Of a stretch of 64,000 nucleotides of DNA, positions 41,951-56,515 are shown piece by piece (positions within the stretch are counted from its first letter, which is position 1; each line of letters opens with the position of its first letter). The notes beneath the pieces were generated by a model. That model was not told the origin of the DNA and made no database searches. It worked only from the letters and a program-made list of their open reading frames with translations. The stretch covers positions 186,001 through 250,000 of IMG/VR virus record IMGVR_UViG_3300042868_005134; one strand, given 5' to 3'. The translations under genes were made by a program, and so were the position numbers.

Positions 41951-41954
41951 TAGT

Positions 41955-43358
41955 ATGAATAAAATATCCAAAACATTTTGTATTTTACCCTGGGTACATT
42001 TAAGTACCCGACCTGATGGTAGTATGAGAGTTTGCTGTACAGCCAATGCTAGTAGCGTTGGCCAGACAAACGATAGAGAACACGGCGGCATGGTAGGTGT
42101 TCTTAAGACAGACGCCGGCAAACCTAACAACTTAAATGTTAGCGATTTCAAAAGTGCATGGAACAGTTCCTATATGCGAAATGTTCGCAAACAAATGCTT
42201 AACGGTGAACAGCCTCCTAGTTGTTTAAAATGTTATAAAGAAGAGGCAGCTGGACATAATAGTAAACGTATGTGGGAAACTAAGTATTGGAGTCAACGTG
42301 TAAGTGTTAATAAGTTAATTGAAGATACTGCAGAAGATGGTAGTGTTCCACCGCAACTTGCCTATATCGATTTACGCTTTGGAACTAAATGCCAGCTAGC
42401 GTGTGTAATGTGTAGTCCTCATGATAGTTCTGGCTGGATTAAAGATTATAAAGCCATCTTTTCTGAAGTAGAAAATGCCAGTTTAAAACAAACCATGTTA
42501 TGGACTGACAAAGGCTCTACCAACGGTAGTAGTTATAATTGGCACAAACAAAACCCTGTGTTCTGGCAACAGTTTTATGAACAAATTCCTAATATGCAGC
42601 AAATTTATTTCGCTGGCGGAGAAAGTTTAATTATTGAAGAACACTACGAAATTCTTGAAGAATGTATTCGTCAAGGTCACGCCAAGAACTTAGAGTTACG
42701 TTACAACTCAAACGGCGTTGAATGGCGCGATGATCTATTTGACTTATGGAAACATTTTAAACTAGTGAGATTCCATTACAGTGTAGACAGCATTGGAGAA
42801 ATGAATGCCTATATTCGTTACCCTAGTATATGGGAACGTACTAAGGAAGTATTTCACATTCTTGATAAGCAAACAGGCAATAATGTTGAAGTTACAGTAG
42901 CTTGTGCTGTACAAGCTCTTAATATCTATTACTTGCCTGACTTTTTAAAGTGGAAATTAGAAGAGGGGTTTACAAAAATTAATATGTGGCCGTTTGGTGC
43001 AGGCGGCGTTAATTATCACTTTGTTTATCACCCGCCGCACCTTAATGTTAAAGTACTTCCTAAAGAATTCAAAGAAGCTTGTCGTAAAAAATACGAAGAG
43101 TTTTATTCATGGTGGGAAGCAAATTGGGAAAAAGGCATTCCTAGTTGGCATAAAGGTAAAGTAACATATGAAGATTGGCGTAAAGCAGAATATGGTATTA
43201 GCCGTTTGGAAGGTATGTTAAAATTTATGGAAAGTGAAGATTGGAGTAATCGATTGCCTGAAACTAAAGAATTTTTAGATTTATGCGACAAACAACGAAA
43301 TCTTAACTTTAGTGAAATTTTTCCAGAAATGAAGGATATTTTTAATGGAACAACATAA
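41955..43358 (+). CDS. Radical SAM enzyme with N-terminal twitch-like domain (type A)
   Basis: 'FCILPW.H...DG.MRVCC...SCLKC'; core CQLACVMC; 'GGES'. Confidence 0.9.
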   Translation: MNKISKTFCILPWVHLSTRPDGSMRVCCTANASSVGQTNDREHGGMVGVLKTDAGKPNNLNVSDFKSAWNSSYMRNVRKQMLNGEQPPSCLKCYKEEAAGHNSKRMWETKYWSQRVSVNKLIEDTAEDGSVPPQLAYIDLRFGTKCQLACVMCSPHDSSGWIKDYKAIFSEVENASLKQTMLWTDKGSTNGSSYNWHKQNPVFWQQFYEQIPNMQQIYFAGGESLIIEEHYEILEECIRQGHAKNLELRYNSNGVEWRDDLFDLWKHFKLVRFHYSVDSIGEMNAYIRYPSIWERTKEVFHILDKQTGNNVEVTVACAVQALNIYYLPDFLKWKLEEGFTKINMWPFGAGGVNYHFVYHPPHLNVKVLPKEFKEACRKKYEEFYSWWEANWEKGIPSWHKGKVTYEDWRKAEYGISRLEGMLKFMESEDWSNRLPETKEFLDLCDKQRNLNFSEIFPEMKDIFNGTT

Positions 43359-44172
43359 AAATTTAGAATGGGTCCCTGGCGATCCTATCACAAAAGAAAT
43401 GCTAGAGGTTAAGTCAGAAGATTACGCATTGTGGAAAAAAACGTGGGGCGATAGCTACTGTGTTGAAAATGTATTTGACGATGATGAGTTGACCTGGTTA
43501 GAAGATTTAATGTATAGAAATCATAAAAGTCGACGTGTTAAGAAAAATGGAACGCTTCACTTTAATGTAGATAACAGACTGATACAAGATAAATTTTTTG
43601 ATAAATTAAAATCAGTTATTCCTGAATTGGAAAATACTGAATTATGGGAAGGCAATTTTTTAATAACTGCTACTCCATATAATATACATATCGACACCGG
43701 TAATCACCAAGTGATGAGTAATGCTACCTATGTTCCGGGGAAGCAATTTATTATTCCTCTTTGGTTCTGTCACGGACACAAAGAGACAGATTATCCTGAA
43801 CACGGCACCGCTATTTTTAAAAATCGATTTATCATGTACGGAACAAATTTTGCCAAAGGAGACGCAAAATATGACACAAATGTTTTTTATACAGTACGTG
43901 ACTATAAGGATTTAGTATGCTATAATAAAGATGGCTCCGTGTGGAACGTTGATTGGTCTAAGCGTAGTGTAAGCGATAACGACTATATTAGATACTTTGA
44001 TCACTTTAAAAGAGAATGGCTAGACGGTTTTGAATTAGAAGCAGTCTACCAATGGAAACGTGGAAGTATTATTGTATTTGATAGATCACAAGCGCACACT
44101 GGCATCAATTTTATGAAAAACAAGGTAACACTGAAATGTGGGTTATCTATGATGACAACAGTTAAAAGATAA
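43345..44172 (+). CDS. Putative 2OG-Fe(II) oxygenase-fold protein
   Basis: HxD ('IHIDTG') and distal His ('WKRGSIIVFDRSQAH'), matching the HxD...H facial triad in a double-stranded beta-helix pattern. Confidence 0.6.
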   Translation: MEQHKNLEWVPGDPITKEMLEVKSEDYALWKKTWGDSYCVENVFDDDELTWLEDLMYRNHKSRRVKKNGTLHFNVDNRLIQDKFFDKLKSVIPELENTELWEGNFLITATPYNIHIDTGNHQVMSNATYVPGKQFIIPLWFCHGHKETDYPEHGTAIFKNRFIMYGTNFAKGDAKYDTNVFYTVRDYKDLVCYNKDGSVWNVDWSKRSVSDNDYIRYFDHFKREWLDGFELEAVYQWKRGSIIVFDRSQAHTGINFMKNKVTLKCGLSMMTTVKR

Positions 44173-45236
44173 TGAAATATTTGCCGAACCCAAAAAGACT
44201 TCAATTTGAACTTAGCAATGTATGTAATCTACATTGTTTAGGTTGTGTGCGAACTGAAACTACACTTAATTCAGTTAAAGCTGCTATCGGCGATCCTACT
44301 TATCTTTCAGTGGATACTTTTTATAAAATAATAACAGATAGCGCACTTGATAGTATTGTGGATTTAGATTTTTGTGGCAGAATAGATGACCCATTAGCAC
44401 ATCCGGATTTTCTAAAAATATTAGAAATGGCAATCGAACATAAATCTTTTAAAATTTTCATTCACACAAATGGCGGATTGCGTAATCCTGAATATTGGAA
44501 AAAACTCGGAAATTTGTTAAAAGGTACAGACCATGTTGTTATGTTTAATGTAGATGGTCTCGAAGATACTAATCACATTTATAGACAAGGGAGTGTCTGG
44601 AGCAATATTGTAGCTAATGCCAAATCTTATATTTCTACAGGTGCTAATGCTACGTGGCAATATATAGAATTTCCTTGGAACAAACATCAGATTCCGGAAG
44701 CATTGTTATTAAGTAAAGAATTGGGCTTTCAAAGTTTTAACGTTCGTCAGGACCGTAGTCGTATACAACATAAATCACTAGAACAAATAGTAGTTATGAA
44801 ACAACGAACACAAATACCAGAACAAAATAGAGACACTTTTTTATTACATCCAAGATACGATACTAGTTATGAAATCACATGTATGAATAAAGTAGACAAC
44901 ATGTATTTTATAGATCATACTGGTAAGCTATGGCCCTGCTGCTTTATTCCAAACGGTTTTATAGAAGATAATAATAAGTTAGCTCAGAAAGAATATTTAC
45001 AAGACAGAATATATGGCAGCTACTCGGATACTACATGGAATGACTGTAACTTACACGATGTATCTTCTATTATAAATCATAAATTTTATACAGAAGATTT
45101 AGTAGATAGTTGGAATTCAGAACAACACGGCATTGAAACTAAAGACAGAATTTTTAGATGTACTGAAACCTGCTCTTCTCGCGCATCCGCCATTAAGCCA
45201 TCTGCAAATTCTACAACTAAAAAATTTAATCAATGA
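44172..45236 (+). CDS. Radical SAM enzyme (type C)
   Basis: CNLHCLGC; 'CGRIDDP'; 'HTNGG'; C-terminal 'TC...FID..G..WPCC...CTETC'. Confidence 0.9.
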   Translation: MKYLPNPKRLQFELSNVCNLHCLGCVRTETTLNSVKAAIGDPTYLSVDTFYKIITDSALDSIVDLDFCGRIDDPLAHPDFLKILEMAIEHKSFKIFIHTNGGLRNPEYWKKLGNLLKGTDHVVMFNVDGLEDTNHIYRQGSVWSNIVANAKSYISTGANATWQYIEFPWNKHQIPEALLLSKELGFQSFNVRQDRSRIQHKSLEQIVVMKQRTQIPEQNRDTFLLHPRYDTSYEITCMNKVDNMYFIDHTGKLWPCCFIPNGFIEDNNKLAQKEYLQDRIYGSYSDTTWNDCNLHDVSSIINHKFYTEDLVDSWNSEQHGIETKDRIFRCTETCSSRASAIKPSANSTTKKFNQ

Positions 45237-46300
45237 TAGCAAAAGATCAAATCAAAATAGTTCATGTTGAAGCTAGTAGTAGATGTAACAGCAGATGCCC
45301 TATGTGTAGTAGATTCACTGCTGATGGATTCGTACAGCCTGAATTAAACGAATTGGATCTAACCGGCGAAGTTTTTTATAAGCTATTTACTAAGGATTTT
45401 ACTAGTCAGCTAGAGCATGTCTATTTTAGCGGAGTATACGGCGATCCTTGCTTGAATAAATTGTTGCCTGAATTTGTTAACTACTTAATGGATAACGGCT
45501 GTAAAAGTGTTAGCATAGATACTAACGGCGGATATCGTAGTGAAGAATGGTGGGCTAAACTTGCTAGAAAAGACGTTCTAATCAATTTTGCGTTGGACGG
45601 CACAGATAATGAAACGTTGGATAAGTATCGTATTGGAGTAGTGTACGACAAAGTATATGCTAATATGAAAGCATATATAGAAGCTGGCGGCAATGCTCAG
45701 TGGAACTTTATTGTATTTAAACATAACGAACATCAAGTAGACATAGCAAAGCAATTGGCATTGGATATGGGCGCAAAGTTTAGACTTAAGGTAACACAAA
45801 AGTTCCGTGGTCGAAAAAATCATAAAGTTATGATAGATGGTGAACTACAACATACATTAGAGCCACCAGATCAAGAATCATTCAGACATCCGAATATAGG
45901 AACTATTGATCATATTCCTATTAGTATTTTTAAGTTTAAAGATTATTCAAGATTATCTCATCTTAACGGAAACAAAGTCACATGTAAAATTCAACAACGA
46001 CAGGAAGTTTACTTAACAAGTATTGGCTTGCTATTACCCTGTTGCTATCTTGCTACTTATACACATGATAGTCCAGGATCCGCACAGTTTACTAGTTTGT
46101 ATAATTTAGAAAAGTTCGATTTAAAATTACTCTCCGTTGTTGAAATTTTAGAAAATTTTAAACCAATAAGTAACAAATGGAATGATACCATAGATGATGG
46201 CAATTTAATTATTTGTTTAGGCACTTGTGGCAATAAAGAAAACACTACTCTTTATCATGATAACAATTTGAAAAAAGAAAACATTTTAAAACAGCAATGA
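45233..46300 (+). CDS. Radical SAM enzyme (type C)
   Basis: CNSRCPMC; 'SGVYGDP'; 'DTNGG'; C-terminal 'TCK...LPCC...CLGTC'. Confidence 0.9.
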   Translation: MIAKDQIKIVHVEASSRCNSRCPMCSRFTADGFVQPELNELDLTGEVFYKLFTKDFTSQLEHVYFSGVYGDPCLNKLLPEFVNYLMDNGCKSVSIDTNGGYRSEEWWAKLARKDVLINFALDGTDNETLDKYRIGVVYDKVYANMKAYIEAGGNAQWNFIVFKHNEHQVDIAKQLALDMGAKFRLKVTQKFRGRKNHKVMIDGELQHTLEPPDQESFRHPNIGTIDHIPISIFKFKDYSRLSHLNGNKVTCKIQQRQEVYLTSIGLLLPCCYLATYTHDSPGSAQFTSLYNLEKFDLKLLSVVEILENFKPISNKWNDTIDDGNLIICLGTCGNKENTTLYHDNNLKKENILKQQ

Positions 46301-47658
46301 CAGCAAAATCTAAGACATTTTGTATATTACCTTTTATACATATTCAAGTTAAACCTAACGGTCAAATAAAGCCGTGTTGCCGATTCGATTTTGTACACGA
46401 CGACTACATTGACAAAGACTGGACTGCTAAAAATGGATCAGCGTATCATGTTTTTAACAAGTATAATATCTCTAACGGTTCTACTCTAACCGAAGCCATG
46501 ACTAGCAATTTATGGAACGATGTTAGAAACAATATGCTAAATGGAAAACCAGTTAGTGGATGTAGGAAGTGTTATACCGCAGAAACTTTTAACGGCAGAT
46601 CTATGCGTGTGCATGAAAATTACGCTAGGAATGATCAAATACAGGACAGTTTATCTAGCAGTATTGAACCATTAAAAATAAAATATCTTGAAATGACTTT
46701 CGGTAATTACTGTAATTTAAAGTGTAGGACATGTGCTGGGGATTTATCGAGTACATGGCACGAAGAAGAAGCATTGTTAGCAAAGGTTTACCCTGGACGA
46801 TATAGCTCACCTAAAGTTTTAAACATCCCGTTTAATTGGAAACCCGAAGATTTTGTTAATATAGAAGAAATTAAATTCACAGGCGGCGAGCCTATGATAC
46901 ATCCTGATTTTTTAAAATTAATGGATATGCTAATTGAAATTGATGTTGCTAAAAATATTGCTCTAGATGTTTTTACAAACTGTAGCTGGATTCCCGGCGG
47001 GAAATTTTTTAAGCGGTTAACTAAATTTAAACAAGTAAAAATTAGTCTAAGTATAGATGGCGTTGGAAAAACTAACGATTATATCAGAACGCCTAGTGAC
47101 TGGCGTGTTGTCGATAGTGTAGTTGATAGTTGGCTTGCTCAGGAAGCAGCTGATACTAATAAGATTCAAATAACTTGGAACCCAACTATCAACATTTACA
47201 ATATTTTAGAAATAGATAACATGATAGATTGGTGGGATAACAAACAAAACGGACATTTTCCCAATCGCTCATGGCCTAATCTAACGGAAAAAGATTATAA
47301 AGAAGATCATAACATATCAAGTTTTAGATTGATTTTTAATATACTACAAGATCCTAAGTATTTGTCAATCTCCAATTTGCCACAATCTGCTAAAGAATTA
47401 GCTAATCGTACAATAAAATCTATATATGACAAATACGATTCTTGGGATATGGCAGAAAATCCTCGTAAAGAAATTTTTAATAAAAAAATGGAAGCAATTA
47501 GAGGAGCATTAAATTCCACAGCAAACATAGAAATGTTAAAATTATTTGCTAGTTATACTGAAGATTTAGATAAATTACGTACACAGTCTTTAAAAGATTC
47601 CTTACCATTATTGTATAAAGAATTAGAAGGGCACGTGGACTATACAGGAAAATTGTAA
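46297..47658 (+). CDS. Radical SAM enzyme (type A)
   Basis: 'FCILPF.H...NG.IKPCC...GCRKC'; core CNLKCRTC; 'GGEP'. Confidence 0.9.
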   Translation: MTAKSKTFCILPFIHIQVKPNGQIKPCCRFDFVHDDYIDKDWTAKNGSAYHVFNKYNISNGSTLTEAMTSNLWNDVRNNMLNGKPVSGCRKCYTAETFNGRSMRVHENYARNDQIQDSLSSSIEPLKIKYLEMTFGNYCNLKCRTCAGDLSSTWHEEEALLAKVYPGRYSSPKVLNIPFNWKPEDFVNIEEIKFTGGEPMIHPDFLKLMDMLIEIDVAKNIALDVFTNCSWIPGGKFFKRLTKFKQVKISLSIDGVGKTNDYIRTPSDWRVVDSVVDSWLAQEAADTNKIQITWNPTINIYNILEIDNMIDWWDNKQNGHFPNRSWPNLTEKDYKEDHNISSFRLIFNILQDPKYLSISNLPQSAKELANRTIKSIYDKYDSWDMAENPRKEIFNKKMEAIRGALNSTANIEMLKLFASYTEDLDKLRTQSLKDSLPLLYKELEGHVDYTGKL

Positions 47659-48902
47659 TGAGCAAGACTTTTTGTGTTATGCCATTCTGCCATGTCAATA
47701 TTAAACAGGAAGGTAAGGTAAGTGCTTGTTGGAGATATCCTGATAAAATTGGAGATTATACCACACAGAGTATACATGAAGTTTGGAATGGTTCTGAGAT
47801 AAAAGAATTACGTAGACAACTACTCAACGACGAGCGTCCTGTAGGATGCCGTAGTTGTTGGGATATGGAAGATAGCGGAGTTCGTAGTACACGATCACAA
47901 ACAGCAGTCGATTATAAAGACATAATGAATATTGAAAAAGCAAAAGCAGTAATTACTGAAGATTTTGCTATGCCCGACGAAAATTTAAAAAGTATCGAAC
48001 TTAGATTTGATAATATTTGTAATTTAATGTGTAGGCACTGTAGTCCTGACTATAGCAGTAAGTGGGAAGCGGCAGTTAAACGAGATGAAAAACTACAAAG
48101 TAAAATGATTCAGTTTGGCACTTTTAGAAAAAGTGATGAGCATATAAATCTTAACCAGAAAATTATTGATGAAATTGGTGGTACTATTTCTTCAAATTTA
48201 ACAGAGATTATGCTAGCAGGCGGCGAACCTTTATATCACGAACGCCATTATGATTTTATTAAATCGATGTTACCGAATGCTAAAAATATAAAACTTAGTT
48301 ATAATAGTAATTTAACCACATTAGATTACAAGGGTAATTCCATTTTAGATTTATGGAAGCACTTTAAAAAGGTTAATTTGCGTGTTAGTATTGATGGCGA
48401 TCCTAGTTGTTATCAATATGTTAGAGCACATGACGGCTTGACTTTAATTGAAAAAAACATTACACTAGTACATAACGTGCCTAATACTAGAGTTAGTGCA
48501 ACATGTACTACTAGTTTATTGAATATAACAAGATTGATATCGATTATAGAATATTTTTTGTCGTTAGGCGCATATTTTCATGCCAGTATAGTTCAATACC
48601 CACGGGCGTTGAATCCTAAGTTGTTACCACTAGAATTAAAAGAAAAAATAACAACTGATTGGACTAACTGGATTGCCGACATTGACACAAACATTGTAAA
48701 CTGTGTAAAGTTATTGCCAACTACAGACGTTGAATCTCATAAGAAAAACATATTGAAGTTTGGAAATATGATAGTTGATTATATGAATTCGGAAAACTGG
48801 CACGAACACTGGCATGAATTTGTGGATTATTCTGCGGTGCTAGATGACCATTTTAAAACAGACTTGTATAGTGTGTATCCTGAATTTAAATTTGTAAAGT
48901 GA
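47658..48902 (+). CDS. Radical SAM enzyme (type A)
   Basis: 'FCVMPFCH...G.VSACW...GCRSC'; core CNLMCRHC; 'GGEP'. Confidence 0.9.
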   Translation: MSKTFCVMPFCHVNIKQEGKVSACWRYPDKIGDYTTQSIHEVWNGSEIKELRRQLLNDERPVGCRSCWDMEDSGVRSTRSQTAVDYKDIMNIEKAKAVITEDFAMPDENLKSIELRFDNICNLMCRHCSPDYSSKWEAAVKRDEKLQSKMIQFGTFRKSDEHINLNQKIIDEIGGTISSNLTEIMLAGGEPLYHERHYDFIKSMLPNAKNIKLSYNSNLTTLDYKGNSILDLWKHFKKVNLRVSIDGDPSCYQYVRAHDGLTLIEKNITLVHNVPNTRVSATCTTSLLNITRLISIIEYFLSLGAYFHASIVQYPRALNPKLLPLELKEKITTDWTNWIADIDTNIVNCVKLLPTTDVESHKKNILKFGNMIVDYMNSENWHEHWHEFVDYSAVLDDHFKTDLYSVYPEFKFVK

Positions 48903-48906
48903 AAAT

Positions 48907-50226
48907 ATGGAAGATTGGAAAAATACGTATTGTTCTAAATCCTGGACTGATGTTAATGTAGACTTTTCAAGCGAGTTTGTTAAAAATTGCTGTAAATCGA
49001 AGCCTATTAAATTTGTACCTAATTTAGATAAAACTTTCTTTGAGTTCTCTCCAGAGTTACTTAAACGCAAGACTGATAGCTTACAAGGAGTACAAAATGA
49101 AGATTGTCATTTTTGTTGGAAAGAAGAAGGTAAGCGTGTAACTTATAGAGATGTACATAATAAATGGACACCTGAATTTATAGAATTAAATCGTGATAAC
49201 TTATTATCTACTGATAAATCATTTGCGAATTATATTGAAGTTAAGTTCTCCAATACTTGCGATATGGCTTGTTTATATTGCGGCCCTAATTTTAGTAGTA
49301 AAATAGCCATAGAAGAAAAAGTTCGAATTAAAAGTGTGCCGTTAGCATCTGAATTTGAAGCTTTTAAAGAATTTTCAGATCCGCTAATTAAAAATGCAGT
49401 TGAAATTAATAGAGAATCTATTGATAATAGTGTGTGGGATAATACACAATTACGATTTGTATTCTTAGGAGGCGAACCCACGTTGATAGATCAATTTTAT
49501 GATTTTATTGAACATATTGTATCTAGAGTTGAACATCATGCTCAACTAGCAAACTGGAAGCACAAAATGAAAAATATCCGTCTTGAAATTGTCACTAATG
49601 GTAATACTACCCCGGCATTAATGGACAAGTTTTTTAAATTATTATACAGTACAAATTTTGAATGGACAATTGGGATAAGTAACGAATCTTTTGGGCATGA
49701 TGCTGAATTGATCAGACATGGGTTAAATTGGGAACGATTTCAAACTAATTTTAAAAAATATATTTCTGTTCCTAAAAAAATTGACAGCATTAATTTAGCA
49801 CCAACTCTTAATATTTTTAGTTTAAAAACATTTCATCTCTACATGGCATGGGTACATGAGCAATTCGATAATCAGTTAAAATTAACAGGTGTTTGTCCAG
49901 CTTTTACATGGCACGGCAATTTTGTAACAGATCCGGTATTAGACATTAAAGTATTGCCAGTTGAATATAGAAAGTACATTGATCTTGCCATTGAAGTTGC
50001 TGAACGTGAAAATAATCCTAAATTTAAGAATAAAAAAAGTACAATTAAATTTTTAAATCAGATGAAAGATAGGATTGGCACAACTGATCCTGAATCAGAT
50101 GATGCTGTATGGTATAGAGAACGAGCGAGAGATTGGCTTGTGATGAAAGAAAAAAAGAAAGGAGTTAGTAATCTAACACCTTTACTATTGAATATCGAAT
50201 ATCATGATTATAAAAGGTATCTGTAA
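48907..50226 (+). CDS. Radical SAM enzyme (type B-like)
   Basis: 'YCSKSW...NCCK...DCHFC'; core CDMACLYC; 'GGEPT'; 'VTNG'. Confidence 0.88.
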   Translation: MEDWKNTYCSKSWTDVNVDFSSEFVKNCCKSKPIKFVPNLDKTFFEFSPELLKRKTDSLQGVQNEDCHFCWKEEGKRVTYRDVHNKWTPEFIELNRDNLLSTDKSFANYIEVKFSNTCDMACLYCGPNFSSKIAIEEKVRIKSVPLASEFEAFKEFSDPLIKNAVEINRESIDNSVWDNTQLRFVFLGGEPTLIDQFYDFIEHIVSRVEHHAQLANWKHKMKNIRLEIVTNGNTTPALMDKFFKLLYSTNFEWTIGISNESFGHDAELIRHGLNWERFQTNFKKYISVPKKIDSINLAPTLNIFSLKTFHLYMAWVHEQFDNQLKLTGVCPAFTWHGNFVTDPVLDIKVLPVEYRKYIDLAIEVAERENNPKFKNKKSTIKFLNQMKDRIGTTDPESDDAVWYRERARDWLVMKEKKKGVSNLTPLLLNIEYHDYKRYL

Positions 50227-51398
50227 TGAGCGATGATTTATCTTGGTCAGCCTACGACTTTACAAAAATTCCATACAATGATATTCAACGTGTGGGTCAA
50301 CGCACAATGTTATATCGTGACTTGTTTACAGTAAGTTGGCTGTTAGGCCGGTTCTGTAATTATCGATGTAGCTACTGCTGGCCCTATGCTCGCAGTGATA
50401 AAAAAGATCATAGACCTACAGAGTTATGTCTGCTTACGGTAGATGAGATTAAACGTCAAGCTAGAGAGCGAGGATTTAATAGTTTTCACTTTAGTCTAAG
50501 TGGCGGCGAACCAACATTTCATCCAGGCTATATTGATATCCTAAATCATCTTAATAACGACGCAGGGAATACAAACTATACCAGTGTACACATGACAACA
50601 AATATGAGTCGCAGTTTACGTTGGTTTGAAGATGAGTATTGTCCTGCTGTAAGTAAGTTTCACAGAGCTAGTATCACTGCCAGTCTACATACCGAACATG
50701 TAGACACACCAGAGAAAATGCAAGACTTTGCTGACAAATTAATATTGTGTCAAAAACACGATGTTCAAATAACTATCAATATGGTTATGGTTCCTGAATG
50801 GTTCGAACGTGACTTTGAAAATGCATTGTTCTTTCACAATCAGGGAATTAATGTAACACTAAAACCTCAGAGTGATCCTACTGCTAGCCGTGTAGTAGAT
50901 GGGTATACTCCTGAAATGTTAAAACGATTACACAATGGAATGCCACAACGTGCCTTCACAGAGAATAAAGCAGATGAAGCTAAATTAGTCAAACGCCCAA
51001 CTCCTACATTTAGAAAAGTTCCTGATCCATTGTACAAAGAAGAAAACGCAAAAATTCCACAACATTTCCAAGTAGAATTTGTTGATAGCAATAAAAAAAT
51101 CTGGTATATGGATCAAGCTGAACGATTCAATGCGTTCAACTTTAATAAGTTTAAAGGCTGGGAATGTTCCAGTGGATATCGTAGTATTATTATACGTGAA
51201 CCAGATGGCAGCATAAAACGCAGTTATAGCTGTAGTGATGTTCCGTTAGGTAATGTAGAAACTGGCTTTAAATTGTTTGACGGTCCAACGCCGTGTATAA
51301 GTGATAGCTGTGTTAGCAGTGCTGACAGTAAGATTCCAAAAAGATCGCCTGGAACTCATTTACCATTGTGGCCAGGCGATACTACTTATCTTGCTTGA
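50226..51398 (+). CDS. Radical SAM enzyme (type D)
   Basis: CNYRCSYC; 'SGGEPT'; C-terminal 'FKGWECSSG...DG...SYSC...PC...SC'. Confidence 0.9.
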   Translation: MSDDLSWSAYDFTKIPYNDIQRVGQRTMLYRDLFTVSWLLGRFCNYRCSYCWPYARSDKKDHRPTELCLLTVDEIKRQARERGFNSFHFSLSGGEPTFHPGYIDILNHLNNDAGNTNYTSVHMTTNMSRSLRWFEDEYCPAVSKFHRASITASLHTEHVDTPEKMQDFADKLILCQKHDVQITINMVMVPEWFERDFENALFFHNQGINVTLKPQSDPTASRVVDGYTPEMLKRLHNGMPQRAFTENKADEAKLVKRPTPTFRKVPDPLYKEENAKIPQHFQVEFVDSNKKIWYMDQAERFNAFNFNKFKGWECSSGYRSIIIREPDGSIKRSYSCSDVPLGNVETGFKLFDGPTPCISDSCVSSADSKIPKRSPGTHLPLWPGDTTYLA

Positions 51399-52726
51399 TG
51401 TAGACATTCTAAATATAATTTTTTTGTGTCTAGCATAAGATATCTGTTGTAATTATACATTATAATTTCTTTCCAAGAATCATATAACTTTTGCTTTTCC
51501 TCCAATGGAAGATTAGCGATTGCCTTTACTTTGTCAATTACGTATTCTAATTCGTCAAAATAATGCCTTTCATTATTGCTCGGTAATTCGAGACCAGGAT
51601 ATTCTTTAAATCCTAGTGATTTTAAAATATTTTTAATTTTATGACCGCCCAAGGTAATGAAAGGTACTCCTGACAAGATTGCCATTGAAGTTTTTTCTGT
51701 CAACATTGACGGAGTGCAATCAAAATCTTCACCGCTAATAATGGAACAAGTTTCTAGCACTATATGAAACATTGAATTTATTTCAAATGGTATCCCTGCT
51801 ATATCTTTTCTTAAATGATCTTTAGAACCGTGATCTATAAATTTTAAGGTATTTAAATTTTCTAGCTTGGTGTGTATAAAACTTAATTGTTTTTGATACT
51901 TGTGAATAATTCCTGTATTTTTACAGTCTTCTACAAACGAATCTTTTGCAGGCAATAATCTACTGTATTGACCAAAATCAGTTATCTTTTCTTTGTCTGC
52001 CCACAATTGGAATAATGTCCTAGTTAGTCTCGGTGTCCTGCAAAACGATTGCCATACTAATGTATCTTGTGTTAGTACTCTATTTCTAATTTCTTCAAAT
52101 AATGCTTCTTTTTTAGATTTCGCATTCGAATATAAATCAGAATCAATATATGCTTTATGAAAAAACGCTCCTGGAAACATGCAGTGATCTACCTGTATGT
52201 TTCTTGACCTATTAGACATATAGTTATTAACAAGTTCGCCACCTACAACATAAAATTTAAGATTTTTAATTCCTCTAAAGAAATGATTTTTAGCAGTTAA
52301 GTAATTAACATACTCGGTTTCAAATAATTTGTAAGATCTAATATAGACATTATCCATTTCGGCAGAGCCGTCGATTATTATAGGAATTTTATTTTCAACT
52401 AAGAAATCTGTCACATCTGGATCTACAGCAAAAAAATCTGTTAAATGAAAAGTCTTAACATGTAACCAAGCTGAAATAAAATAAAATACATCGACATTTT
52501 TATCAATTGTACCGTTATTCTTTACCTCAGCAATAAATTCACCAGCTTTTCTAAAAGTAATAAAATCTGAAGAGCAATTATACAATGTCCTAGGAGTTTC
52601 TGAAATCCAGCCAAATTGGTAGCCTTCTGTAACTAACTTGGCAATCAATTTTTCGTATACTCTTTCTAGTAAAGTTACAACTTTTCCATCTACGATATCG
52701 TCAACTAAAAATATTGCTTTTTTCAT
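51386..52726 (-). CDS. Putative glycosyltransferase, GT10 (fucosyltransferase)-like C-terminus
   Basis: 'FHIVLET...LTEKT..AI..G.PFI..G' resembles the GT10 donor-binding motif (F.L.FEN...Y.TEK...A...G.VPI); coupled by an ATGA overlap to gmd. Confidence 0.45.
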   Translation of the reverse strand: MKKAIFLVDDIVDGKVVTLLERVYEKLIAKLVTEGYQFGWISETPRTLYNCSSDFITFRKAGEFIAEVKNNGTIDKNVDVFYFISAWLHVKTFHLTDFFAVDPDVTDFLVENKIPIIIDGSAEMDNVYIRSYKLFETEYVNYLTAKNHFFRGIKNLKFYVVGGELVNNYMSNRSRNIQVDHCMFPGAFFHKAYIDSDLYSNAKSKKEALFEEIRNRVLTQDTLVWQSFCRTPRLTRTLFQLWADKEKITDFGQYSRLLPAKDSFVEDCKNTGIIHKYQKQLSFIHTKLENLNTLKFIDHGSKDHLRKDIAGIPFEINSMFHIVLETCSIISGEDFDCTPSMLTEKTSMAILSGVPFITLGGHKIKNILKSLGFKEYPGLELPSNNERHYFDELEYVIDKVKAIANLPLEEKQKLYDSWKEIIMYNYNRYLMLDTKKLYLECLHQAR

Positions 52727-53721
52727 CTTGCGTTAGGATTTGTCTTATAAAAATCCATCCAGTAATCTACCATCTCATCTAACATAGATTCAAAGGTATA
52801 TGTTGGTACCCACCCAAGTGTTGTTCTAGCTTTGGATGAATCACCTTTTAAATAATGTAACTCTTCGGGTCGTTTAAATTTTTCATCGGAAAATACGTAT
52901 TTTGTTCGATCCAGTTCTAATTTTTCAAATACATAGTTAACTAAGTCATTAACTGTTTTTGTCACACCAGTCGCAATTACATAATCATCACTTTTTTCTT
53001 GTTGTAGCATTAACCACATAGATTCTACAAAATCTTTAGAATGACCCCAATCCCTTGCTGCTTCAAAATTACCTAAAATTAATTTTTTAGATTTACCTAA
53101 TTTAATTTTGACAGCCTCTAATACAACTTTGTTGGTTACAAAATTAATACCACGTCTTGGGCTTTCGTGATTAAACAAAATTCCAGAACATATAAACATG
53201 TTGTACGCATTTCTATAATTATGACATAGACTATGTGCGTATAGCTTGCTACAACCATATGGCGATACAGGTATTAATGGAGTGGTTTCTCGTTGAAACC
53301 CGTCAGAGTCACACGAGTTTCCAAACATTTCCGATGTTGCTGCATGGTAAACTTTTGAATGATTGGAAAATTTTCTAACAGCTTCAAGTACTGACAATGT
53401 TCCGCCAGCATTCACATCGAGTGTATACTTTGGTAATTCAAAGCTAATCTGTACATGACTTTGTGCGCCAATGTGATAAATTTCATCTGCCTGTACATTG
53501 CTTATTACACTTTCTACACTTAGCGGATCGGTAAGATCCATGTATTTCAACTGAATACGGTTGTCCTTGAACAAATGCTCTATGCGAGTAGTTTGAGATT
53601 CAGGCACAGAGTTACGTCTTACTGTGCCTGCCACTTTGTAATTTTTAGAGACTAATAGTTCGGCAAGGTAAGAGGCATCTTGTCCATTTGCTCCAATAAT
53701 TAATGCTGTTTTTTGAGTCAT
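52723..53721 (-). CDS. gmd: GDP-mannose 4,6-dehydratase
   Basis: 'GANGQDASYLAE', 'AQSHVQISF', 'TSEMFG', 'SPYGCSK', 'NHESPRRG.NFVT.K', 'RDWGH'. Confidence 0.95.
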   Translation of the reverse strand: MTQKTALIIGANGQDASYLAELLVSKNYKVAGTVRRNSVPESQTTRIEHLFKDNRIQLKYMDLTDPLSVESVISNVQADEIYHIGAQSHVQISFELPKYTLDVNAGGTLSVLEAVRKFSNHSKVYHAATSEMFGNSCDSDGFQRETTPLIPVSPYGCSKLYAHSLCHNYRNAYNMFICSGILFNHESPRRGINFVTNKVVLEAVKIKLGKSKKLILGNFEAARDWGHSKDFVESMWLMLQQEKSDDYVIATGVTKTVNDLVNYVFEKLELDRTKYVFSDEKFKRPEELHYLKGDSSKARTTLGWVPTYTFESMLDEMVDYWMDFYKTNPNAR

Positions 53722-53722
53722 A

Positions 53723-54877
53723 TTATTCCTGATTTATAATCGAAGCAATAACTTCGATGTCTTCCTTAACTAGTCCTTGATGATTAGGAACATAAAAACC
53801 TTGTTTATCAATAATATCGGCATTTGGTAAATCTGTCAAACGTCCGTATCGTTTGATCCAGAAAGGTTTGTTTGCCATATTGCCAGCAATTAAGGGACGA
53901 GTTTCAATATTGTTTTGTTTAAGTTTTTCTATAATTTTATTTCTATTGGGCAATACAACAGGGTATGCGAAATTTGAAACAAAGTCGTTATCTCGTTGCG
54001 CAAGTAATAATTTGTTATTGTTAATTAGTTCTTTATAAATTAAAAAGTTTTTGTTACGTATCCGACTGTACTTATCCAACTTGTCAACTGCTCCAAGTCC
54101 AATGAACGCCTGTAAATCTGTTGATCTAACATTGAGTCCCGGTACGTAAAATGTATATAATGCTTCAAAGTCAGTTACATTGGCTTGCTTTCTTAATTCT
54201 TGTTGTTTACTTGTTGGCAAATCTCTATCCCATCCATGACTACGCATCATTAGTAATCCGTGATAAAATTCTTCATTATCAGTATTAATAAACCCGCCTT
54301 CGATGGTGCTTAAATGATGACCAAAGTAAGTGGAGAACAGCGACGCAATACCAAATGATCCTAAATACTTTCCTTGATATTTAGAACCCATTGATTCGCA
54401 ATTATCTTCTACTAATAGAACTCCGTATTCTTCGCACAAGTGTACTATTCTTTGTATATCTGGTACTAATCCTAATGGAGTTACCAAAATGAATACAGAT
54501 GGTTCAAACTCTTTAAAAATAGTTTCTAAGTGGGCAAGGTCGCACGATAGGTCAACTAAATTACAGTCACATAGACGTGTTTCAAAATTTAACAGCATAG
54601 GGGAACTTACATCGGTAGACCAACTCAGTGCCGGAGCAACTAATCGATTATTCTTTAAGAAACCAAACTCTTTTAATACTGCTAACGAAAGTAAAATAGC
54701 TGACGAGCCTGAGTTGACAAATACAGAATATTTTGTTCCTATCTTCTTTGCCCATTTGCGTTCTAACTCAATTGTTAATTCGCCTTTGGTTAATCGAGGA
54801 ATCGTATCCTGCGATAGCCATTCTACAAGTTTAGCAATGTCAGATTTATCAATAGTATCACTGACCAAATTTATCAT
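53723..54877 (-). CDS. colD: GDP-4-keto-6-deoxy-D-mannose 3-dehydratase (ColD-like; DegT/DnrJ PLP family)
   Basis: 'VNSGSSA.LL', 'EDNCESMG', 'STYFGHHLSTIEGG' with His at the position of the usual PLP-binding Lys, 'RSHGWDR', 'PG.NVR'; lies between gmd and an fcl-like gene. Confidence 0.75.
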   Translation of the reverse strand: MINLVSDTIDKSDIAKLVEWLSQDTIPRLTKGELTIELERKWAKKIGTKYSVFVNSGSSAILLSLAVLKEFGFLKNNRLVAPALSWSTDVSSPMLLNFETRLCDCNLVDLSCDLAHLETIFKEFEPSVFILVTPLGLVPDIQRIVHLCEEYGVLLVEDNCESMGSKYQGKYLGSFGIASLFSTYFGHHLSTIEGGFINTDNEEFYHGLLMMRSHGWDRDLPTSKQQELRKQANVTDFEALYTFYVPGLNVRSTDLQAFIGLGAVDKLDKYSRIRNKNFLIYKELINNNKLLLAQRDNDFVSNFAYPVVLPNRNKIIEKLKQNNIETRPLIAGNMANKPFWIKRYGRLTDLPNADIIDKQGFYVPNHQGLVKEDIEVIASIINQE

Positions 54878-55754
54878 ACGTTTTCCTTATGCCATCTCGT
54901 AAGGTAGTTAAACCAAACTCTGGAAATATTTTTGTTAACTTACTTATACTAACATCTTTTCGAAGTTGTCCATTAGGCATAGTTGTATCCCAGTTTATTG
55001 ATAGATGAGTAGCATCACATACATCTAACGCAATTTCAGCAATTTCTTTTATAGTTAATGTTTCGTTTGTGGCAACATTAAAACTTTCAGTAATATTATT
55101 ATCTATTACAAATTTAATAACATTACAAAAATCATCAACATGCATAAATTGTCTTAACGGTGTACCATCTCCGAATAAAGTAATAGAGTTATCATTATTT
55201 TGTTTAGCTTGCCATATCTTTTTAATTAAGGCTGTTACAAAATGACTGTTATTGCCATGCTTGTCTCCTTCTCCAAAAAGATTACACGGAATAAGATAGC
55301 TATATTGTGTGTTGTATTGTGTATTGTACGCATCAATTTGTACTCCTAAACATCGCTTTGCATAACCGTATGAAAAATTAGTAGGAGTAGGCGGCCCTAA
55401 ATGTAGCATGTTTTCGTCGAGTGGGTATGTCTCAACTACATCCGGATAAATGCAAGTGCTTAATACTCCAATGAATTTCTTTACATTATACGCATGGGCG
55501 TATTTTACTAATAATGTATTCATCAGTATATTTTCAGTAAAGTACGGTGCTGGATTATTAATGTTATCAATGATTCCGCCAACTTTAGCGGCAAGGTGAA
55601 TAATACAATCTGGTTCTAATTCTTTATACATGTTGATTACATGTTGTTCGCAAGTTAAGTCATAATCTGCCGATGACAAATATATTGCGTCTGAAATATA
55701 TTTTTTTAAATTGGCACCGACTAATCCACTTCCGCCAGTTACAACTATTTTCAT
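54858..55754 (-). CDS. GDP-4-keto-6-deoxysugar epimerase/reductase (Fcl/ColC family)
   Basis: 'TGGSGLVG', 'HLAAKVGGI', 'STCIYP', YxxxK 'YGYAKR', 'P.NL.G', 'GDGTPLRQF.H'. True start probably the ATG at 55754, which overlaps the upstream stop. Confidence 0.9.
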   Translation of the reverse strand: MKIVVTGGSGLVGANLKKYISDAIYLSSADYDLTCEQHVINMYKELEPDCIIHLAAKVGGIIDNINNPAPYFTENILMNTLLVKYAHAYNVKKFIGVLSTCIYPDVVETYPLDENMLHLGPPTPTNFSYGYAKRCLGVQIDAYNTQYNTQYSYLIPCNLFGEGDKHGNNSHFVTALIKKIWQAKQNNDNSITLFGDGTPLRQFMHVDDFCNVIKFVIDNNITESFNVATNETLTIKEIAEIALDVCDATHLSINWDTTMPNGQLRKDVSISKLTKIFPEFGLTTLRDGIRKTYDKFGQ

Positions 55755-56515
55755 TGTTTTCTCTCTATATCTTCTTCTATACATTCTGTACCGTATTGTA
55801 TTTCCACAATACGACAAACCGCTTCGAACGGATTATGTATTTTATGCCAATTGCCCAAAGGTATTACTACCTGAGAATGTTGTGTTAATGTTAGCATAGG
55901 CAATGCGTAGCCGCTCGTCAACTGCTGTTCTAATACGCATTGTCCTTCAGCAACGTGCCAAAATTCGTGACGTTTTAAATGCCGTTGCATGCTTAATGAT
56001 TGTCCCGGTTCTATAGTAAGCTCTTTTACTTTACAACCGTTTACATCATATAGTACTTGATAGTAACCCCATGTACGTGATGTTTTAATAGATTTCCATT
56101 CTTCCAATATCCAACTACTTGAATTTTTCTTTGTGTTTCCGCCAACTCCAAATACAAACTCTAGTTTATCGTCTACTAAGTCCATTTCATGTATATTTTC
56201 TTTTGTACGGTCTCCACCGTTGGCAAAAATAATAGTAGCATCGGGGTACATAGCTCTAACACCTGTGATAGTGTTTTTACTACTACCGTCGGCATCAGGG
56301 TAACAAACCACTTTATCTACAACTTTAAGAGATTCAATGATGCGGCAACGTTCGTATTCTTCCATAAAGGCCTGACCCTTTTTACGAACTAACCAATCAT
56401 CTGTATTAATACCAACAATCAGCATGTCACCTAGTTTACTAGCTGCTTCAAAGTACTCAATATGCCCAGAATGAAGGGGGTCGAAACCCCCTGTTACAAG
56501 TACGATTCTTTTCAT
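55751..56515 (-). CDS. Nucleotidyltransferase (HxGH) fused to a mannose-6-phosphate isomerase type II-like cupin
   Basis: N-terminal 'TGGFDPLHSGH...RKKG...ANGGDR'; C-terminal 'RTWGYY...KVKEL.I.PG.SLSMQRH..R.E.W.V...EIQYG..C.EEDIER'. Confidence 0.85.
   Translation of the reverse strand: MKRIVLVTGGFDPLHSGHIEYFEAASKLGDMLIVGINTDDWLVRKKGQAFMEEYERCRIIESLKVVDKVVCYPDADGSSKNTITGVRAMYPDATIIFANGGDRTKENIHEMDLVDDKLEFVFGVGGNTKKNSSSWILEEWKSIKTSRTWGYYQVLYDVNGCKVKELTIEPGQSLSMQRHLKRHEFWHVAEGQCVLEQQLTSGYALPMLTLTQHSQVVIPLGNWHKIHNPFEAVCRIVEIQYGTECIEEDIERKQ

What the first reader, a model, noticed from the sequence alone, without database searches (positions are those of the whole stretch)
52723..55754. Complete phage-encoded GDP-L-colitose pathway (Gmd, ColD-like, ColC-like)
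Seen: the DegT-family gene between gmd and the fcl-like gene has 'STYFGHHLSTIEGG', with His where sugar aminotransferases such as perosamine synthase have the PLP-binding Lys. Known: this His is diagnostic of 3-dehydratases (ColD and E1), and Gmd, ColD and ColC together make GDP-L-colitose, a rare 3,6-dideoxyhexose of O-antigens. Inference: the phage makes colitose, or fucose if the ColD step is bypassed. Automatic annotation would probably mislabel this gene as an aminotransferase.
Basis: partly seen in the sequence, partly recalled or inferred. Interest (0 to 1): 0.75.

Follow-up and report, generated by a model that had tools for sequence, protein, structure and literature searches.

The report
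Phage GDP-colitose sugar pathway cassette
A 383-kb freshwater T4-like phage carries three intact, overlapping genes that should turn GDP-mannose into the rare 3,6-dideoxy sugar GDP-L-colitose, followed by a phage-specific glycosyltransferase; no enzyme has been assayed, and I found no paper reporting this pathway in a virus.

Summary
Window 52723-55754 (minus strand) holds three genes:
- fcl-like, 298 aa.
- A DegT-family gene, 384 aa.
- gmd, 332 aa.

The motif STYFGHHLSTIEGG is at 54334-54293. His187 aligns with the catalytic His188 of E. coli ColD, where aminotransferases have the Schiff-base Lys.

The DegT protein is ColD-like:
- ColD is its best solved relative (E 4e-56, against 1.6e-29 for E1 and 2e-23 for perosamine synthase).
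- Its model superposes on ColD at TM 0.87-0.89.
- It lacks the [2Fe-2S] cysteines of E1.
- It keeps the residues that separate ColD from E1.

It is not inside the canonical ColD clade. It belongs to a large aquatic, mostly viral "G-H-H" clade. The fcl-like partner also forms its own clade, separate from enterobacterial ColC.

The gmd/fcl-like/colD-like trio recurs in 27 of 29 bacterial and archaeal loci, in several viral contigs, and in the isolated cyanophage ACG-2014f, where the ColD homolog is annotated "aminotransferase".

Downstream lies an uncharacterised GT-B glycosyltransferase with a fucosyltransferase-like T-E-K motif. Sister phages carry a different sugar module plus a diverged copy of this transferase at the same position, so this is a swappable glyco-cassette.

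The product and the acceptor are inferred, not shown.

The parts
54858..55754 (-). fcl-like gene (298 aa from MKIVVTGG): GDP-4-keto-(3,)6-deoxy-D-mannose epimerase/reductase, proposed to act as GDP-L-colitose synthase (ColC function) and possibly as GDP-L-fucose synthase
   Evidence: Pfam Epimerase 9.3e-47. NCBIfam GDP-L-fucose synthase NF047922 scores 201 bits, below the 500 cut-off. The best solved relative is human GDP-fucose synthase 4b8w at 6e-55; E. coli GFS scores 9e-35. It is 36% identical to E. coli O111 ColC and 28% to E. coli Fcl. Ser107, Cys109, Tyr136, Lys140 and His179 are all kept. Its ATG overlaps the stop of the upstream gene (ATGA), and its 3' end overlaps the colD-like start by 20 nt.
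53723..54877 (-). colD-like gene (384 aa): PLP/PMP-dependent GDP-4-keto-6-deoxy-D-mannose 3-dehydratase of a viral 'G-H-H' clade
   Evidence: PF01041 at 2.6e-52. PDB matches: ColD 2gms 4.3e-56, E1 3bcx 1.6e-29, perosamine synthase 2.2e-23. The AF2 model has pLDDT 94.3, and the top 12 Foldseek hits are all ColD at TM 0.87-0.89. The E1 Fe-S Cys motif is absent. The residues that distinguish ColD from E1 are kept.
54293..54334 (-). Active-site motif STYFGHHLSTIEGG. His187 (codon CAT, 54319-54317) replaces the Schiff-base Lys. Gly186 sits where canonical ColD has Ser187.
52723..53721 (-). gmd (332 aa): GDP-mannose 4,6-dehydratase
   Evidence: PF16363 matches full length at 2.5e-108. TIGR01472 scores 362 bits, below the 415 cut-off. 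The best solved relatives are all GMDs: A. thaliana 2.6e-89, human 5e-88. Catalytic Thr/Glu/Tyr/Lys are kept. It starts 1 nt after the colD-like stop.
51386..52726 (-). 446-aa GT-B fold glycosyltransferase of a phage-specific family with no Pfam model; candidate colitosyl/fucosyl transferase
   Evidence: Its start overlaps the gmd stop by 4 nt. No Pfam hit. The AF2 model has pLDDT 88.9 and pTM 0.89. All significant fold matches are GT-B glycosyltransferases. The top VIA Z scores are 11.2-11.7: T4 beta-glucosyltransferase, exostosin, and H. pylori alpha1,3-fucosyltransferase with GDP-fucose. E344 and K345 are invariant and E325 and T343 nearly so, forming an L-E-T ... L-T-E-K motif. hhalign puts this in register with the E-N ... 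T-E-K of two phage GT10 proteins, though only weakly (E 0.001-0.03). In sister phages a different sugar module replaces the one upstream.
55751..56515 (-). 254-aa fusion of a HIGH-type nucleotidyltransferase (CTP_transf_like) with a type II mannose-6-phosphate isomerase cupin domain. It is a conserved backbone gene immediately upstream and may supply GDP-mannose (speculative).
   Evidence: PF01467 at 2.1e-12 (residues 7-79) and PF01050 at 8.9e-17 (residues 144-252). rfaE domain II scores 73 bits, below the cut-off. The family is abundant, and in related phages it lies after the DNA polymerase gene, not beside gmd. It is kept in sister phages that lack fcl/colD/gmd. The genome has no PF00483 or PF02878 gene.

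Best explanation
The block is a phage-borne nucleotide-sugar cassette that converts GDP-D-mannose into GDP-L-colitose (3,6-dideoxy-L-xylo-hexose, that is 3-deoxy-L-fucose).

Proposed steps:
1. Gmd oxidises and dehydrates GDP-mannose to GDP-4-keto-6-deoxy-D-mannose.
2. The ColD-like enzyme forms a PMP-sugar Schiff base, uses His187 as general base to expel the C3 hydroxyl, and releases GDP-4-keto-3,6-dideoxy-D-mannose. PMP is regenerated from PLP with glutamate. No iron-sulfur cluster or reductase partner is needed.
3. The fcl-like enzyme epimerises C5 (Cys/His pair) and reduces C4 with NAD(P)H, giving GDP-L-colitose. Colitose is 3-deoxy-fucose, so the same enzyme acting on the step-1 product would give GDP-L-fucose. 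A mixed output is therefore possible.
4. The translationally coupled GT-B glycosyltransferase downstream probably transfers the sugar to an unknown acceptor: a host envelope glycan or a phage-made product.

What is shown: gene integrity, catalytic residues, family relationships, gene linkage and the cassette structure. What is inferred: every enzymatic step, the product, the donor of the transferase and the acceptor.
For: - **ColD type.** ColD is the nearest characterised relative by sequence and by predicted structure. His187 aligns with His188. Three of the four E1 Fe-S cysteines are absent. ColD-specific residues E162, S163, H215, G216, R250, P332 and N371 are kept, where E1 differs.
- **Intact partner enzymes.** Gmd and the fcl-like enzyme keep all catalytic residues.
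- **Operon structure.** Five genes are packed with overlaps or 1-nt gaps. The fcl-like gene directly precedes and overlaps colD-like, as colC does with colD in E. coli O111.
- **Recurrent linkage.** gmd, an fcl homolog and a His-type DegT gene co-occur in 27 of 29 bacterial and archaeal loci. The His-type DegT gene also lies beside one or both of the others in all ten distinct viral or viral-looking contigs and in cyanophage ACG-2014f gp223-225.
- **No alternative fate.** The genome holds only one DegT gene, so no Lys-type aminotransferase competes for the intermediate.
- **Coupling of the transferase.** The GT-B gene co-varies with the sugar module across syntenic sister phages.
- **Mechanism.** The roles of His, PMP and glutamate are taken from the review PMC8987622.
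Against: - The ColD-like protein is only 31% identical to E. coli ColD. In the tree it forms a separate long-stemmed clade, unresolved relative to canonical ColD and E1.
- It has Gly where all 28 canonical ColD sequences have Ser187.
- Its nearest cellular relative (45% identity, a Pelagibacteraceae single-cell genome) lies in a different NDP-sugar context, without gmd or fcl. GDP specificity therefore rests on linkage.
- The fcl-like protein is not in the enterobacterial ColC group. It scores higher against human GDP-fucose synthase.
- All three enzymes score below the NCBIfam equivalog cut-offs.
- No RNA run was listed, and nothing has been assayed.
Confidence: 0.7

Rival explanations
1. The cassette makes a different 3-deoxy sugar. 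The G-H-H clade enzyme is a 3-dehydratase, but the final nucleotide sugar is not L-colitose. It could be a 3,6-dideoxyhexose of another configuration, or the enzyme could act on a non-GDP substrate.
For: The G-H-H clade is as distinct from canonical ColD as E1 is. Its closest cellular member works beside a Lys-type aminotransferase and a generic NDP-sugar 4,6-dehydratase. The fcl-like partner forms its own long-branched clade.
Against: In the viral clade the gene is coupled to a bona fide Gmd and an Fcl-type enzyme that keeps the Cys/His epimerisation pair. With those enzymes, the chemistry leads to colitose. The Arg/Asn residues conserved across canonical ColD (R219, N248, R250, R331) are kept.
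Confidence: 0.12
2. The physiological product is GDP-L-fucose. Gmd and the fcl-like enzyme form the known phage fucose pathway, and the DegT gene is inactive, regulatory or minor.
For: Gmd plus GDP-fucose synthase plus fucosyltransferases are already known in T4-like cyanophages (S-SCSM1; PMC9602691). The fcl-like protein is most similar to characterised fucose synthases. Relatives carry GT10/GT11 fucosyltransferase-family genes nearby.
Against: The DegT gene is intact, and 45 columns are invariant across a 30-sequence alignment that includes canonical ColD, among them the whole active-site motif. It sits between and overlaps the other two genes, and it is conserved in at least 119 clusters at 65-75% identity. 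This argues for a selected catalytic role. The GT11 family also contains a known colitosyltransferase (from my own knowledge, not tested here).
Confidence: 0.1
3. The DegT protein is an aminotransferase after all, and the product is a GDP-4-amino sugar such as perosamine.
For: It has the same fold and the same substrate class as GDP-perosamine synthase. According to the review, SpnQ, another His-type enzyme, can transaminate when it lacks its reductase.
Against: There is no Lys at the Schiff-base position. Perosamine synthase scores only 86 bits, against 194 for ColD. The review states that ColD and E1 show no transaminase activity under such conditions. An fcl-type 4-reductase would have no role in a perosamine route.
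Confidence: 0.04
4. The block is bacterial DNA or an assembly artefact, not a phage feature.
For: The record is an uncultivated metagenome assembly with no terminal repeats.
Against: The window also carries a baseplate wedge gene, tail-fibre-like genes, and CobS-like, DUF2201 and ThyX genes typical of T4-like aquatic phages. The same block occurs at 100% identity in two other IMG/VR contigs and in at least 24 lake metagenome runs. Sister phages are syntenic on both sides. GC content matches the rest of the window.
Confidence: 0.02

Closest known systems
E. coli O55/O111 colitose genes (Gmd, ColD = WbdK, ColC) of the O-antigen cluster
   Same: Same three enzyme families, and the same catalytic His (His188/His187). 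There is no Fe-S motif. The fcl-type gene directly precedes and overlaps the colD-type gene. The predicted fold superposes at TM 0.87-0.89.
   Different: Identity is 31% for ColD, 36% for ColC and 43% for Gmd. The phage ColD-like protein lies in a separate clade and has Gly for Ser187. Here gmd lies downstream instead of upstream. There is no manB, manC, wzx, wzy or GDP-sugar hydrolase. The element is carried by a phage and is followed by a phage-specific GT-B transferase.
Synechococcus phage ACG-2014f gp223-gp225 (NC_026927; annotated nucleotide-sugar epimerase x2 and aminotransferase)
   Same: A T4-like phage with gmd, fcl-type and G-H-H DegT genes in a row, followed by glycosyltransferases.
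   Different: The order is the canonical gmd-fcl-colD. Its DegT protein is about 32% identical both to the window's protein and to E. coli ColD, so it is a third lineage. Its partner is E. coli-Fcl-like (49%). Its host is a cyanobacterium, whereas the window's phage lacks psbA.
Phage- and virus-encoded GDP-L-fucose pathway (Gmd + GDP-fucose synthase, e.g. cyanophage S-SCSM1 ORF121/122)
   Same: Phage-borne Gmd and an Fcl-type enzyme beside glycosyltransferases. These are interpreted as cell-envelope modification genes (PMC9602691).
   Different: A ColD-type 3-dehydratase is inserted between the two genes, diverting the intermediate to a 3,6-dideoxy sugar.
E1 (RfbH/DdhC, CDP-6-deoxy-L-threo-D-glycero-4-hexulose 3-dehydrase) of Yersinia and Salmonella
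   Same: DegT fold with His replacing Lys, and C3 deoxygenation of a 4-keto-6-deoxy NDP-hexose.
   Different: E1 needs a [2Fe-2S] cluster and the E3 reductase. The phage protein lacks three of the four cluster cysteines and the E1-specific insert, and it scores 106 bits against E1 versus 194 against ColD.
GT10 alpha1,3-fucosyltransferases (for the 446-aa downstream protein)
   Same: GT-B fold with VIA Z 11.2-11.6 to H. pylori FucT. It has an invariant T-E-K motif, preceded by an acidic E-T/E-N motif in the same register.
   Different: No Pfam PF00852 hit in any of 19 family members. hhalign gives only E 0.001-0.03. T4 beta-glucosyltransferase and exostosin score equally well. It has an extra N-terminal part and is 446 aa.

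Membership tests
ColD (GDP-4-keto-6-deoxy-D-mannose 3-dehydratase) | DegT / aspartate-aminotransferase type fold | tested here: met
   PF01041 at 2.6e-52. The AF2 model has pLDDT 94.3 and TM 0.87-0.89 to 2gms, 2r0t and 3b8x.
ColD (GDP-4-keto-6-deoxy-D-mannose 3-dehydratase) | Catalytic His in place of the PLP Schiff-base Lys | tested here: met
   His187 aligns with His188 of 2gms and with the mutated residue of 3b8x and 2r0t. It is invariant in the clade.
ColD (GDP-4-keto-6-deoxy-D-mannose 3-dehydratase) | No [2Fe-2S] binding motif (C-X57-C-X-C-X7-C), which separates ColD from E1 and SpnQ | tested here: met
   Only the first Cys column is kept, and ColD also has that one. The other three columns are Leu, a gap and Glu.
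ColD (GDP-4-keto-6-deoxy-D-mannose 3-dehydratase) | Falls inside the clade of characterised and canonical ColD | tested here: inconclusive
   The quick ML tree gives three His-type clades (E1-like, viral G-H-H, canonical S-H-H) in an unresolved fork. The viral clade has a stem of 2.2 changes per site.
ColD (GDP-4-keto-6-deoxy-D-mannose 3-dehydratase) | Ser187 before the catalytic His. This is a signature of all 28 canonical sequences but is not known to be essential, since E1 has Ala. | tested here: not met
   The phage and its whole clade have Gly186. I therefore file the protein as ColD-like (it should work like ColD), not as a canonical ColD ortholog.
ColD (GDP-4-keto-6-deoxy-D-mannose 3-dehydratase) | Genomic coupling to gmd and an fcl/colC-type gene | tested here: met
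ColD (GDP-4-keto-6-deoxy-D-mannose 3-dehydratase) | Converts GDP-4-keto-6-deoxymannose to the 3,6-dideoxy-4-keto product, using PLP and glutamate | not testable with these tools
   Needs an enzyme assay.
E1 / RfbH (CDP-sugar 3-dehydrase) | Fe-S cysteine motif and NCBIfam NF011936 above its cut-off | tested here: not met
   168 bits against a cut-off of 423. The Cys motif is absent.
Sugar 4-aminotransferase (e.g. GDP-perosamine synthase) | Schiff-base Lys in the S-x-x-x-x-K motif | tested here: not met
   His is at that column.
GDP-mannose 4,6-dehydratase (Gmd) | Full-length family match and catalytic Thr/Glu/Tyr/Lys | tested here: met
   PF16363 covers positions 1-332 of 332 at 2.5e-108. The 11 best PDB hits are all GMD or GMD-like entries. 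T-S-E and Y-x-x-x-K are kept. TIGR01472 scores 362 bits, below its 415 cut-off, so this is a divergent member.
GDP-L-fucose synthase / GDP-L-colitose synthase (Fcl/ColC group of SDRs) | Ser107, Cys109, Tyr136, Lys140 and His179 (E. coli Fcl numbering) | tested here: met
   All five are kept. The best PDB hits are GDP-fucose synthases.
GDP-L-fucose synthase / GDP-L-colitose synthase (Fcl/ColC group of SDRs) | Orthology to characterised ColC rather than Fcl | tested here: inconclusive
   It forms its own viral clade on a long stem, weakly sister (SH-aLRT 83) to an Fcl-type clade. Partners of ColD are found in both ColC-type and Fcl-type groups. NF047922 scores 201 bits, below its 500 cut-off.
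GT10 fucosyltransferase (446-aa protein) | Match to PF00852 | tested here: not met
   None of the 19 family members matches, even at E 10. Only the GT-B fold and a T-E-K motif are shared.

The most novel reading that the evidence does not exclude
This lineage of jumbo aquatic phages may carry a swappable glyco-cassette. At one fixed genomic slot, between a conserved nucleotidyltransferase-isomerase gene and a conserved array of radical SAM genes, different phages carry different activated-sugar modules. Here it is GDP-colitose; in sister phages it is a nucleotide-sugar 6-dehydrogenase plus a methyltransferase. Each module is paired with a co-diverged member of a phage-specific GT-B transferase family.

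The sugar would decorate a phage-made product, either a virion protein or the product of the radical SAM array, rather than host LPS. That would give phages serotype-like glycan variation, including a 3,6-dideoxyhexose, a sugar class otherwise associated with bacterial O-antigens.
Probability: 0.25. Interest if true: 0.75.

Novelty: new member of a known kind. Interest (0 to 1): 0.5.

Why it matters
Colitose and other 3,6-dideoxyhexoses are known as O-antigen determinants of a few Gram-negative bacteria. Full-text searches for colitose together with phage or viruses found no paper describing a virus that makes one.

The viral G-H-H ColD-like gene has at least 119 distinct close clusters in aquatic metagenomes. 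Databases label it as an aminotransferase or as the CDP-specific E1 enzyme. Phage potential to make dideoxy sugars is therefore systematically overlooked.

If confirmed, three things follow:
- A new class of sugar is added to virus-encoded glycosylation.
- It provides a divergent, Fe-S-independent 3-dehydratase and a partner reductase for chemoenzymatic synthesis of GDP-colitose.
- The cassette swap offers a way to ask what aquatic phages glycosylate, and why they vary it.

Tried and rejected
- **E1-type dehydrase.** Rejected: the Fe-S cysteines are absent and the score is lower.
- **Aminotransferase.** Rejected: there is no Lys.
- **DNA glycosylation.** I considered this because T4 beta-glucosyltransferase is a top structural match of the 446-aa protein. 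It is disfavoured: the genome has no ThyA-family hydroxymethylase, and the match is generic to the GT-B fold, since exostosin and FucT score the same.
- **Cyanophage origin.** Not supported: there is no psbA, although the isolated cyanophage ACG-2014f has an analogous trio.
- **The nucleotidyltransferase-cupin gene as part of the island.** Rejected as a cassette member. It is a conserved backbone gene, found after the DNA polymerase gene in other phages and kept in sister phages without the trio. A role in GDP-mannose supply remains speculative.
- **Substrate of the sister phages' dehydrogenase (UDP-glucose or GDP-mannose).** Unresolved: 65 versus 54 bits.
- **Promoter and terminator scan.** No more sites than in shuffled sequence.
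- **GT10 membership of the 446-aa protein.** No Pfam hit and only weak hhalign scores.
- **Expression evidence.** No RNA run was listed, so I did not use read laying.
- **Primary ColD structure paper (PubMed 18045869).** Not held. Residue roles beyond His188 rest on conservation analysis and on PDB entry titles.
- **A megablast search of the phage collection with the block.** No match.

Full report
**Observation**

One search shows a tight minus-strand gene row:
- 56515-55751: 254 aa.
- 55754-54858: 298 aa, counted from MKIVVTGG.
- 54877-53723: 384 aa.
- 53721-52723: 332 aa.
- 52726-51386: 446 aa.

Neighbouring genes overlap (ATGA, 20 nt, 4 nt) or are 1 nt apart, so this is one operon. The finding's coordinates cover genes 2 to 4.

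Pfam names them Epimerase, DegT_DnrJ_EryC1 and GDP_Man_Dehyd. The quoted motif is residues 182-195 of the DegT protein (window 54334-54293), and His187 is the CAT codon at 54319-54317.

**It is a phage**

- The window is bases 186001-250000 of a 383,411-bp IMG/VR virus record that CheckV rates complete.
- The window also holds a T4-type baseplate wedge gene, tail-fibre-like genes, a 4651-aa ORF, a CobS-like ATPase, a DUF2201 protein and ThyX.
- Two other IMG/VR contigs carry the block at 100% identity.
- At least 24 lake-water metagenome runs hold it.
- There is no psbA, so the host is probably not a cyanobacterium. The host remains unknown.

**The DegT protein**

- *Sequence.* Against all PDB sequences the best hits are the four E. 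coli ColD entries (4.3e-56 to 8.3e-55). They are followed by E1 (1.6e-29) and GDP-perosamine synthase (2.2e-23). The alignment puts His187 on His188, the residue changed in the H188N and H188K crystal forms.
- *Structure.* An AlphaFold model (pLDDT 94.3) has ColD chains as its 12 best Foldseek matches, at TM 0.87-0.89.
- *Fe-S motif.* E1 and SpnQ need a [2Fe-2S] cluster, and ColD does not (review PMC8987622). Of the four cluster cysteines in an E1-like sequence (C204-X57-C262-X-C264-X7-C272), the phage protein keeps only the first. ColD also has that one.
- *Conserved columns.* Of 110 columns conserved in 28 canonical ColD sequences, the phage keeps 57%, E1-like proteins 49% and Lys-type aminotransferases 35%. 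At the positions where ColD and E1 differ (E162, S163, H215, G216, R250, P332, N371), the phage sides with ColD.
- *Phylogeny.* It is not a canonical ColD. A maximum-likelihood tree gives three His-type clades in an unresolved fork: E1-like, canonical S-H-H ColD (including E. coli O111), and a long-stemmed G-H-H clade. The G-H-H clade contains the window's protein, seven viral or viral-looking contigs and one Pelagibacteraceae single-cell genome.
- *Abundance.* The G-H-H clade is large. The 119 best metagenome clusters, at 65-75% identity, all carry G-H-H.

**Gmd and the fcl-like enzyme**

Gmd matches its Pfam model end to end. It has only GMDs as close solved relatives and keeps Thr/Glu/Tyr/Lys.

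The fcl-like protein keeps Ser107, Cys109, Tyr136, Lys140 and His179. These are the reductase triad plus the acid/base pair used for epimerisation in GDP-fucose synthase; the roles are from my own knowledge of that enzyme.

Its best solved relative is human GDP-fucose synthase (6e-55). It is 36% identical to E. coli O111 ColC and 28% to E. coli Fcl.

In a tree it forms its own viral clade. Proteins that sit beside ColD genes fall both in a ColC-type grade and in an Fcl-type clade; Aquimarina, Methylobacillus and cyanophage ACG-2014f gp224 are in the Fcl-type clade. Phylogeny therefore cannot separate "ColC" from "Fcl".

Chemically this matters little. Colitose is 3-deoxy-L-fucose, so an Fcl-type enzyme that accepts the 3-deoxy keto sugar yields colitose.

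**Linkage**

- In 27 of 29 bacterial or archaeal loci retrieved with the DegT protein, gmd, an fcl homolog and a His-type DegT gene lie together, mostly in the order gmd-fcl-colD. The exceptions are a contig end and the Pelagibacteraceae locus.
- E. coli O111 has colC directly before colD, overlapping it.
- Viral contigs L034, L039, L040 and L041 have all three genes. L035-L038 have the fcl-colD pair. L033 has gmd, a GT11 gene and colD.
- Cyanophage ACG-2014f has gp223 (gmd), gp224 (fcl-type) and gp225 (G-H-H DegT, annotated aminotransferase). These are followed by glycosyltransferases, a methyltransferase and a sulfotransferase.
- The window's genome has no second DegT gene.

**The downstream 446-aa protein**

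- It has no Pfam family, and neither do its relatives.
- An exhaustive search finds only about 19 full-length 50% clusters. Atlas neighbours are viral.
- The model (pLDDT 88.9) matches only GT-B glycosyltransferases.
- With VIA-align the top scores (Z 11.2-11.7) are T4 beta-glucosyltransferase, exostosin and H. pylori alpha1,3-fucosyltransferase bound to GDP-fucose.
- The family has invariant Glu344-Lys345 in an L-T-E-K motif, preceded by L-E-T. hhalign aligns this in register with the E-N ... T-E-K of two phage GT10 proteins, but weakly.

I read it as a divergent GT-B transferase, possibly fucosyltransferase-like.

**Cassette structure**

Sister phages L070 and L071 are syntenic with the window across the CobS-like, DUF2201, ThyX and nucleotidyltransferase-cupin genes on one side and radical SAM genes on the other. 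Identity there is 59-90%.

Between the cupin gene and the GT-B gene they carry a nucleotide-sugar 6-dehydrogenase and a SAM methyltransferase instead of fcl-colD-gmd. Their GT-B gene is only 40-42% identical. L067 and L072 show the dehydrogenase-GT-B pair as well.

The sugar module and its transferase therefore vary together in a fixed slot. This is the best evidence that the transferase uses the product of the module.

**Upstream supply**

The 254-aa protein fuses a HIGH-type nucleotidyltransferase with a type II phosphomannose isomerase cupin domain. It belongs to a very abundant phage family that usually lies after the DNA polymerase gene.

The genome has no ManC-type (PF00483) or ManB-type (PF02878) gene. 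The pathway is therefore complete only from GDP-mannose, which must come from the host or, speculatively, through this fusion.

**Acceptor**

The acceptor is unknown. Host envelope modification is the usual reading for such phage genes. DNA glycosylation is disfavoured because no hydroxymethylase is present. Glycosylation of a phage product is open.

**Literature**

Full-text searches combining colitose with phage, virus-encoded or viruses, and 3-dehydrase with phage genome, found no report of a virus-encoded colitose or ColD gene. Phage Gmd plus fucose synthase is known. The library does not cover most subscription journals.

**Verdict**

Confidence that GDP-L-colitose is a product is 0.70. 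It is a known pathway in a new carrier, with divergent enzymes and an interesting cassette context: a new member of a known kind, interest 0.5.

Noticed in passing
window 34254-51398: There is an array of 12 radical SAM genes in 17 kb. Four exceed the NCBIfam cut-off for 'N-terminal twitch domain radical SAM' (NF033640, 232-424 bits) and a fifth scores just below it (158 bits). A nitroreductase-like gene (39534-40658, minus strand) and several ORFs without any family are interspersed. Homologs at 70-92% identity are kept in sister phages, next to the GT-B gene. The last radical SAM gene and the GT-B gene converge and overlap by 13 nt (51386-51398).
   Followed up: partly
L070:5108-8431, L071:6030-9308 versus window 51386-55754: Syntenic sister phages carry a nucleotide-sugar 6-dehydrogenase plus a methyltransferase in place of fcl-colD-gmd, together with a 40-42% identical GT-B gene. 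This is a swapped glyco-cassette in a conserved backbone.
   Followed up: yes
window 55751-56515; L060-L064: The 254-aa fusion of a CTP_transf_like nucleotidyltransferase with a type II mannose-6-phosphate isomerase cupin is a very abundant family: all 8000 scored candidates matched at E <= 1e-10. In other phages it lies after the DNA polymerase gene, near GTP cyclohydrolase I, PTPS and APS-kinase genes. In cyanophages S-SSM7 and P-TIM68 a gene matching only the nucleotidyltransferase half is annotated on its own.
   Followed up: partly
window 4031-17986: A single 4651-aa ORF directly follows the baseplate wedge gene (591-4031). It was not analysed.
   Followed up: no
L002 (Pelagibacteraceae single-cell genome) 2553-8597: The closest cellular G-H-H dehydratase (45% identity) lies beside a Lys-type DegT aminotransferase, a generic NDP-sugar 4,6-dehydratase, a kinase-NTP_transferase fusion, a GT2 and a 3,5-epimerase-like cupin. 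This looks like a different 3-deoxy (amino) sugar route, without gmd or fcl.
   Followed up: partly
L048 (E. coli O111 NC_013364) 9318-11404; L057 (NC_026927) 5044-8161: Reference annotation gives generic or misleading names. E. coli O111 ColD is named 'DegT/DnrJ/EryC1/StrS family aminotransferase' and ColC is named 'NAD-dependent epimerase/dehydratase family protein'. Cyanophage ACG-2014f gp225 is named 'aminotransferase'. In strain 11128 the colanic-acid gmd is truncated by IS elements and fcl is missing.
   Followed up: yes
G000:C1 42493-42900, 66948-67412, 71661-72275 (outside the window): The same phage has further glycan-related genes elsewhere: a GT2 domain inside a 1137-aa ORF, a 244-aa GT2 and another SDR epimerase-family gene.
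   Followed up: no
L040 (451-kb TARA scaffold), L041 (220-kb contig): Close relatives of the fcl-colD pair sit beside GT10 and GT11 fucosyltransferase-family genes, a sulfotransferase, and a second Lys-type DegT gene with an acetyltransferase, in contigs that look viral (PhoH, HSP70). Large marine phages appear to assemble complex glycan loci.
   Followed up: partly
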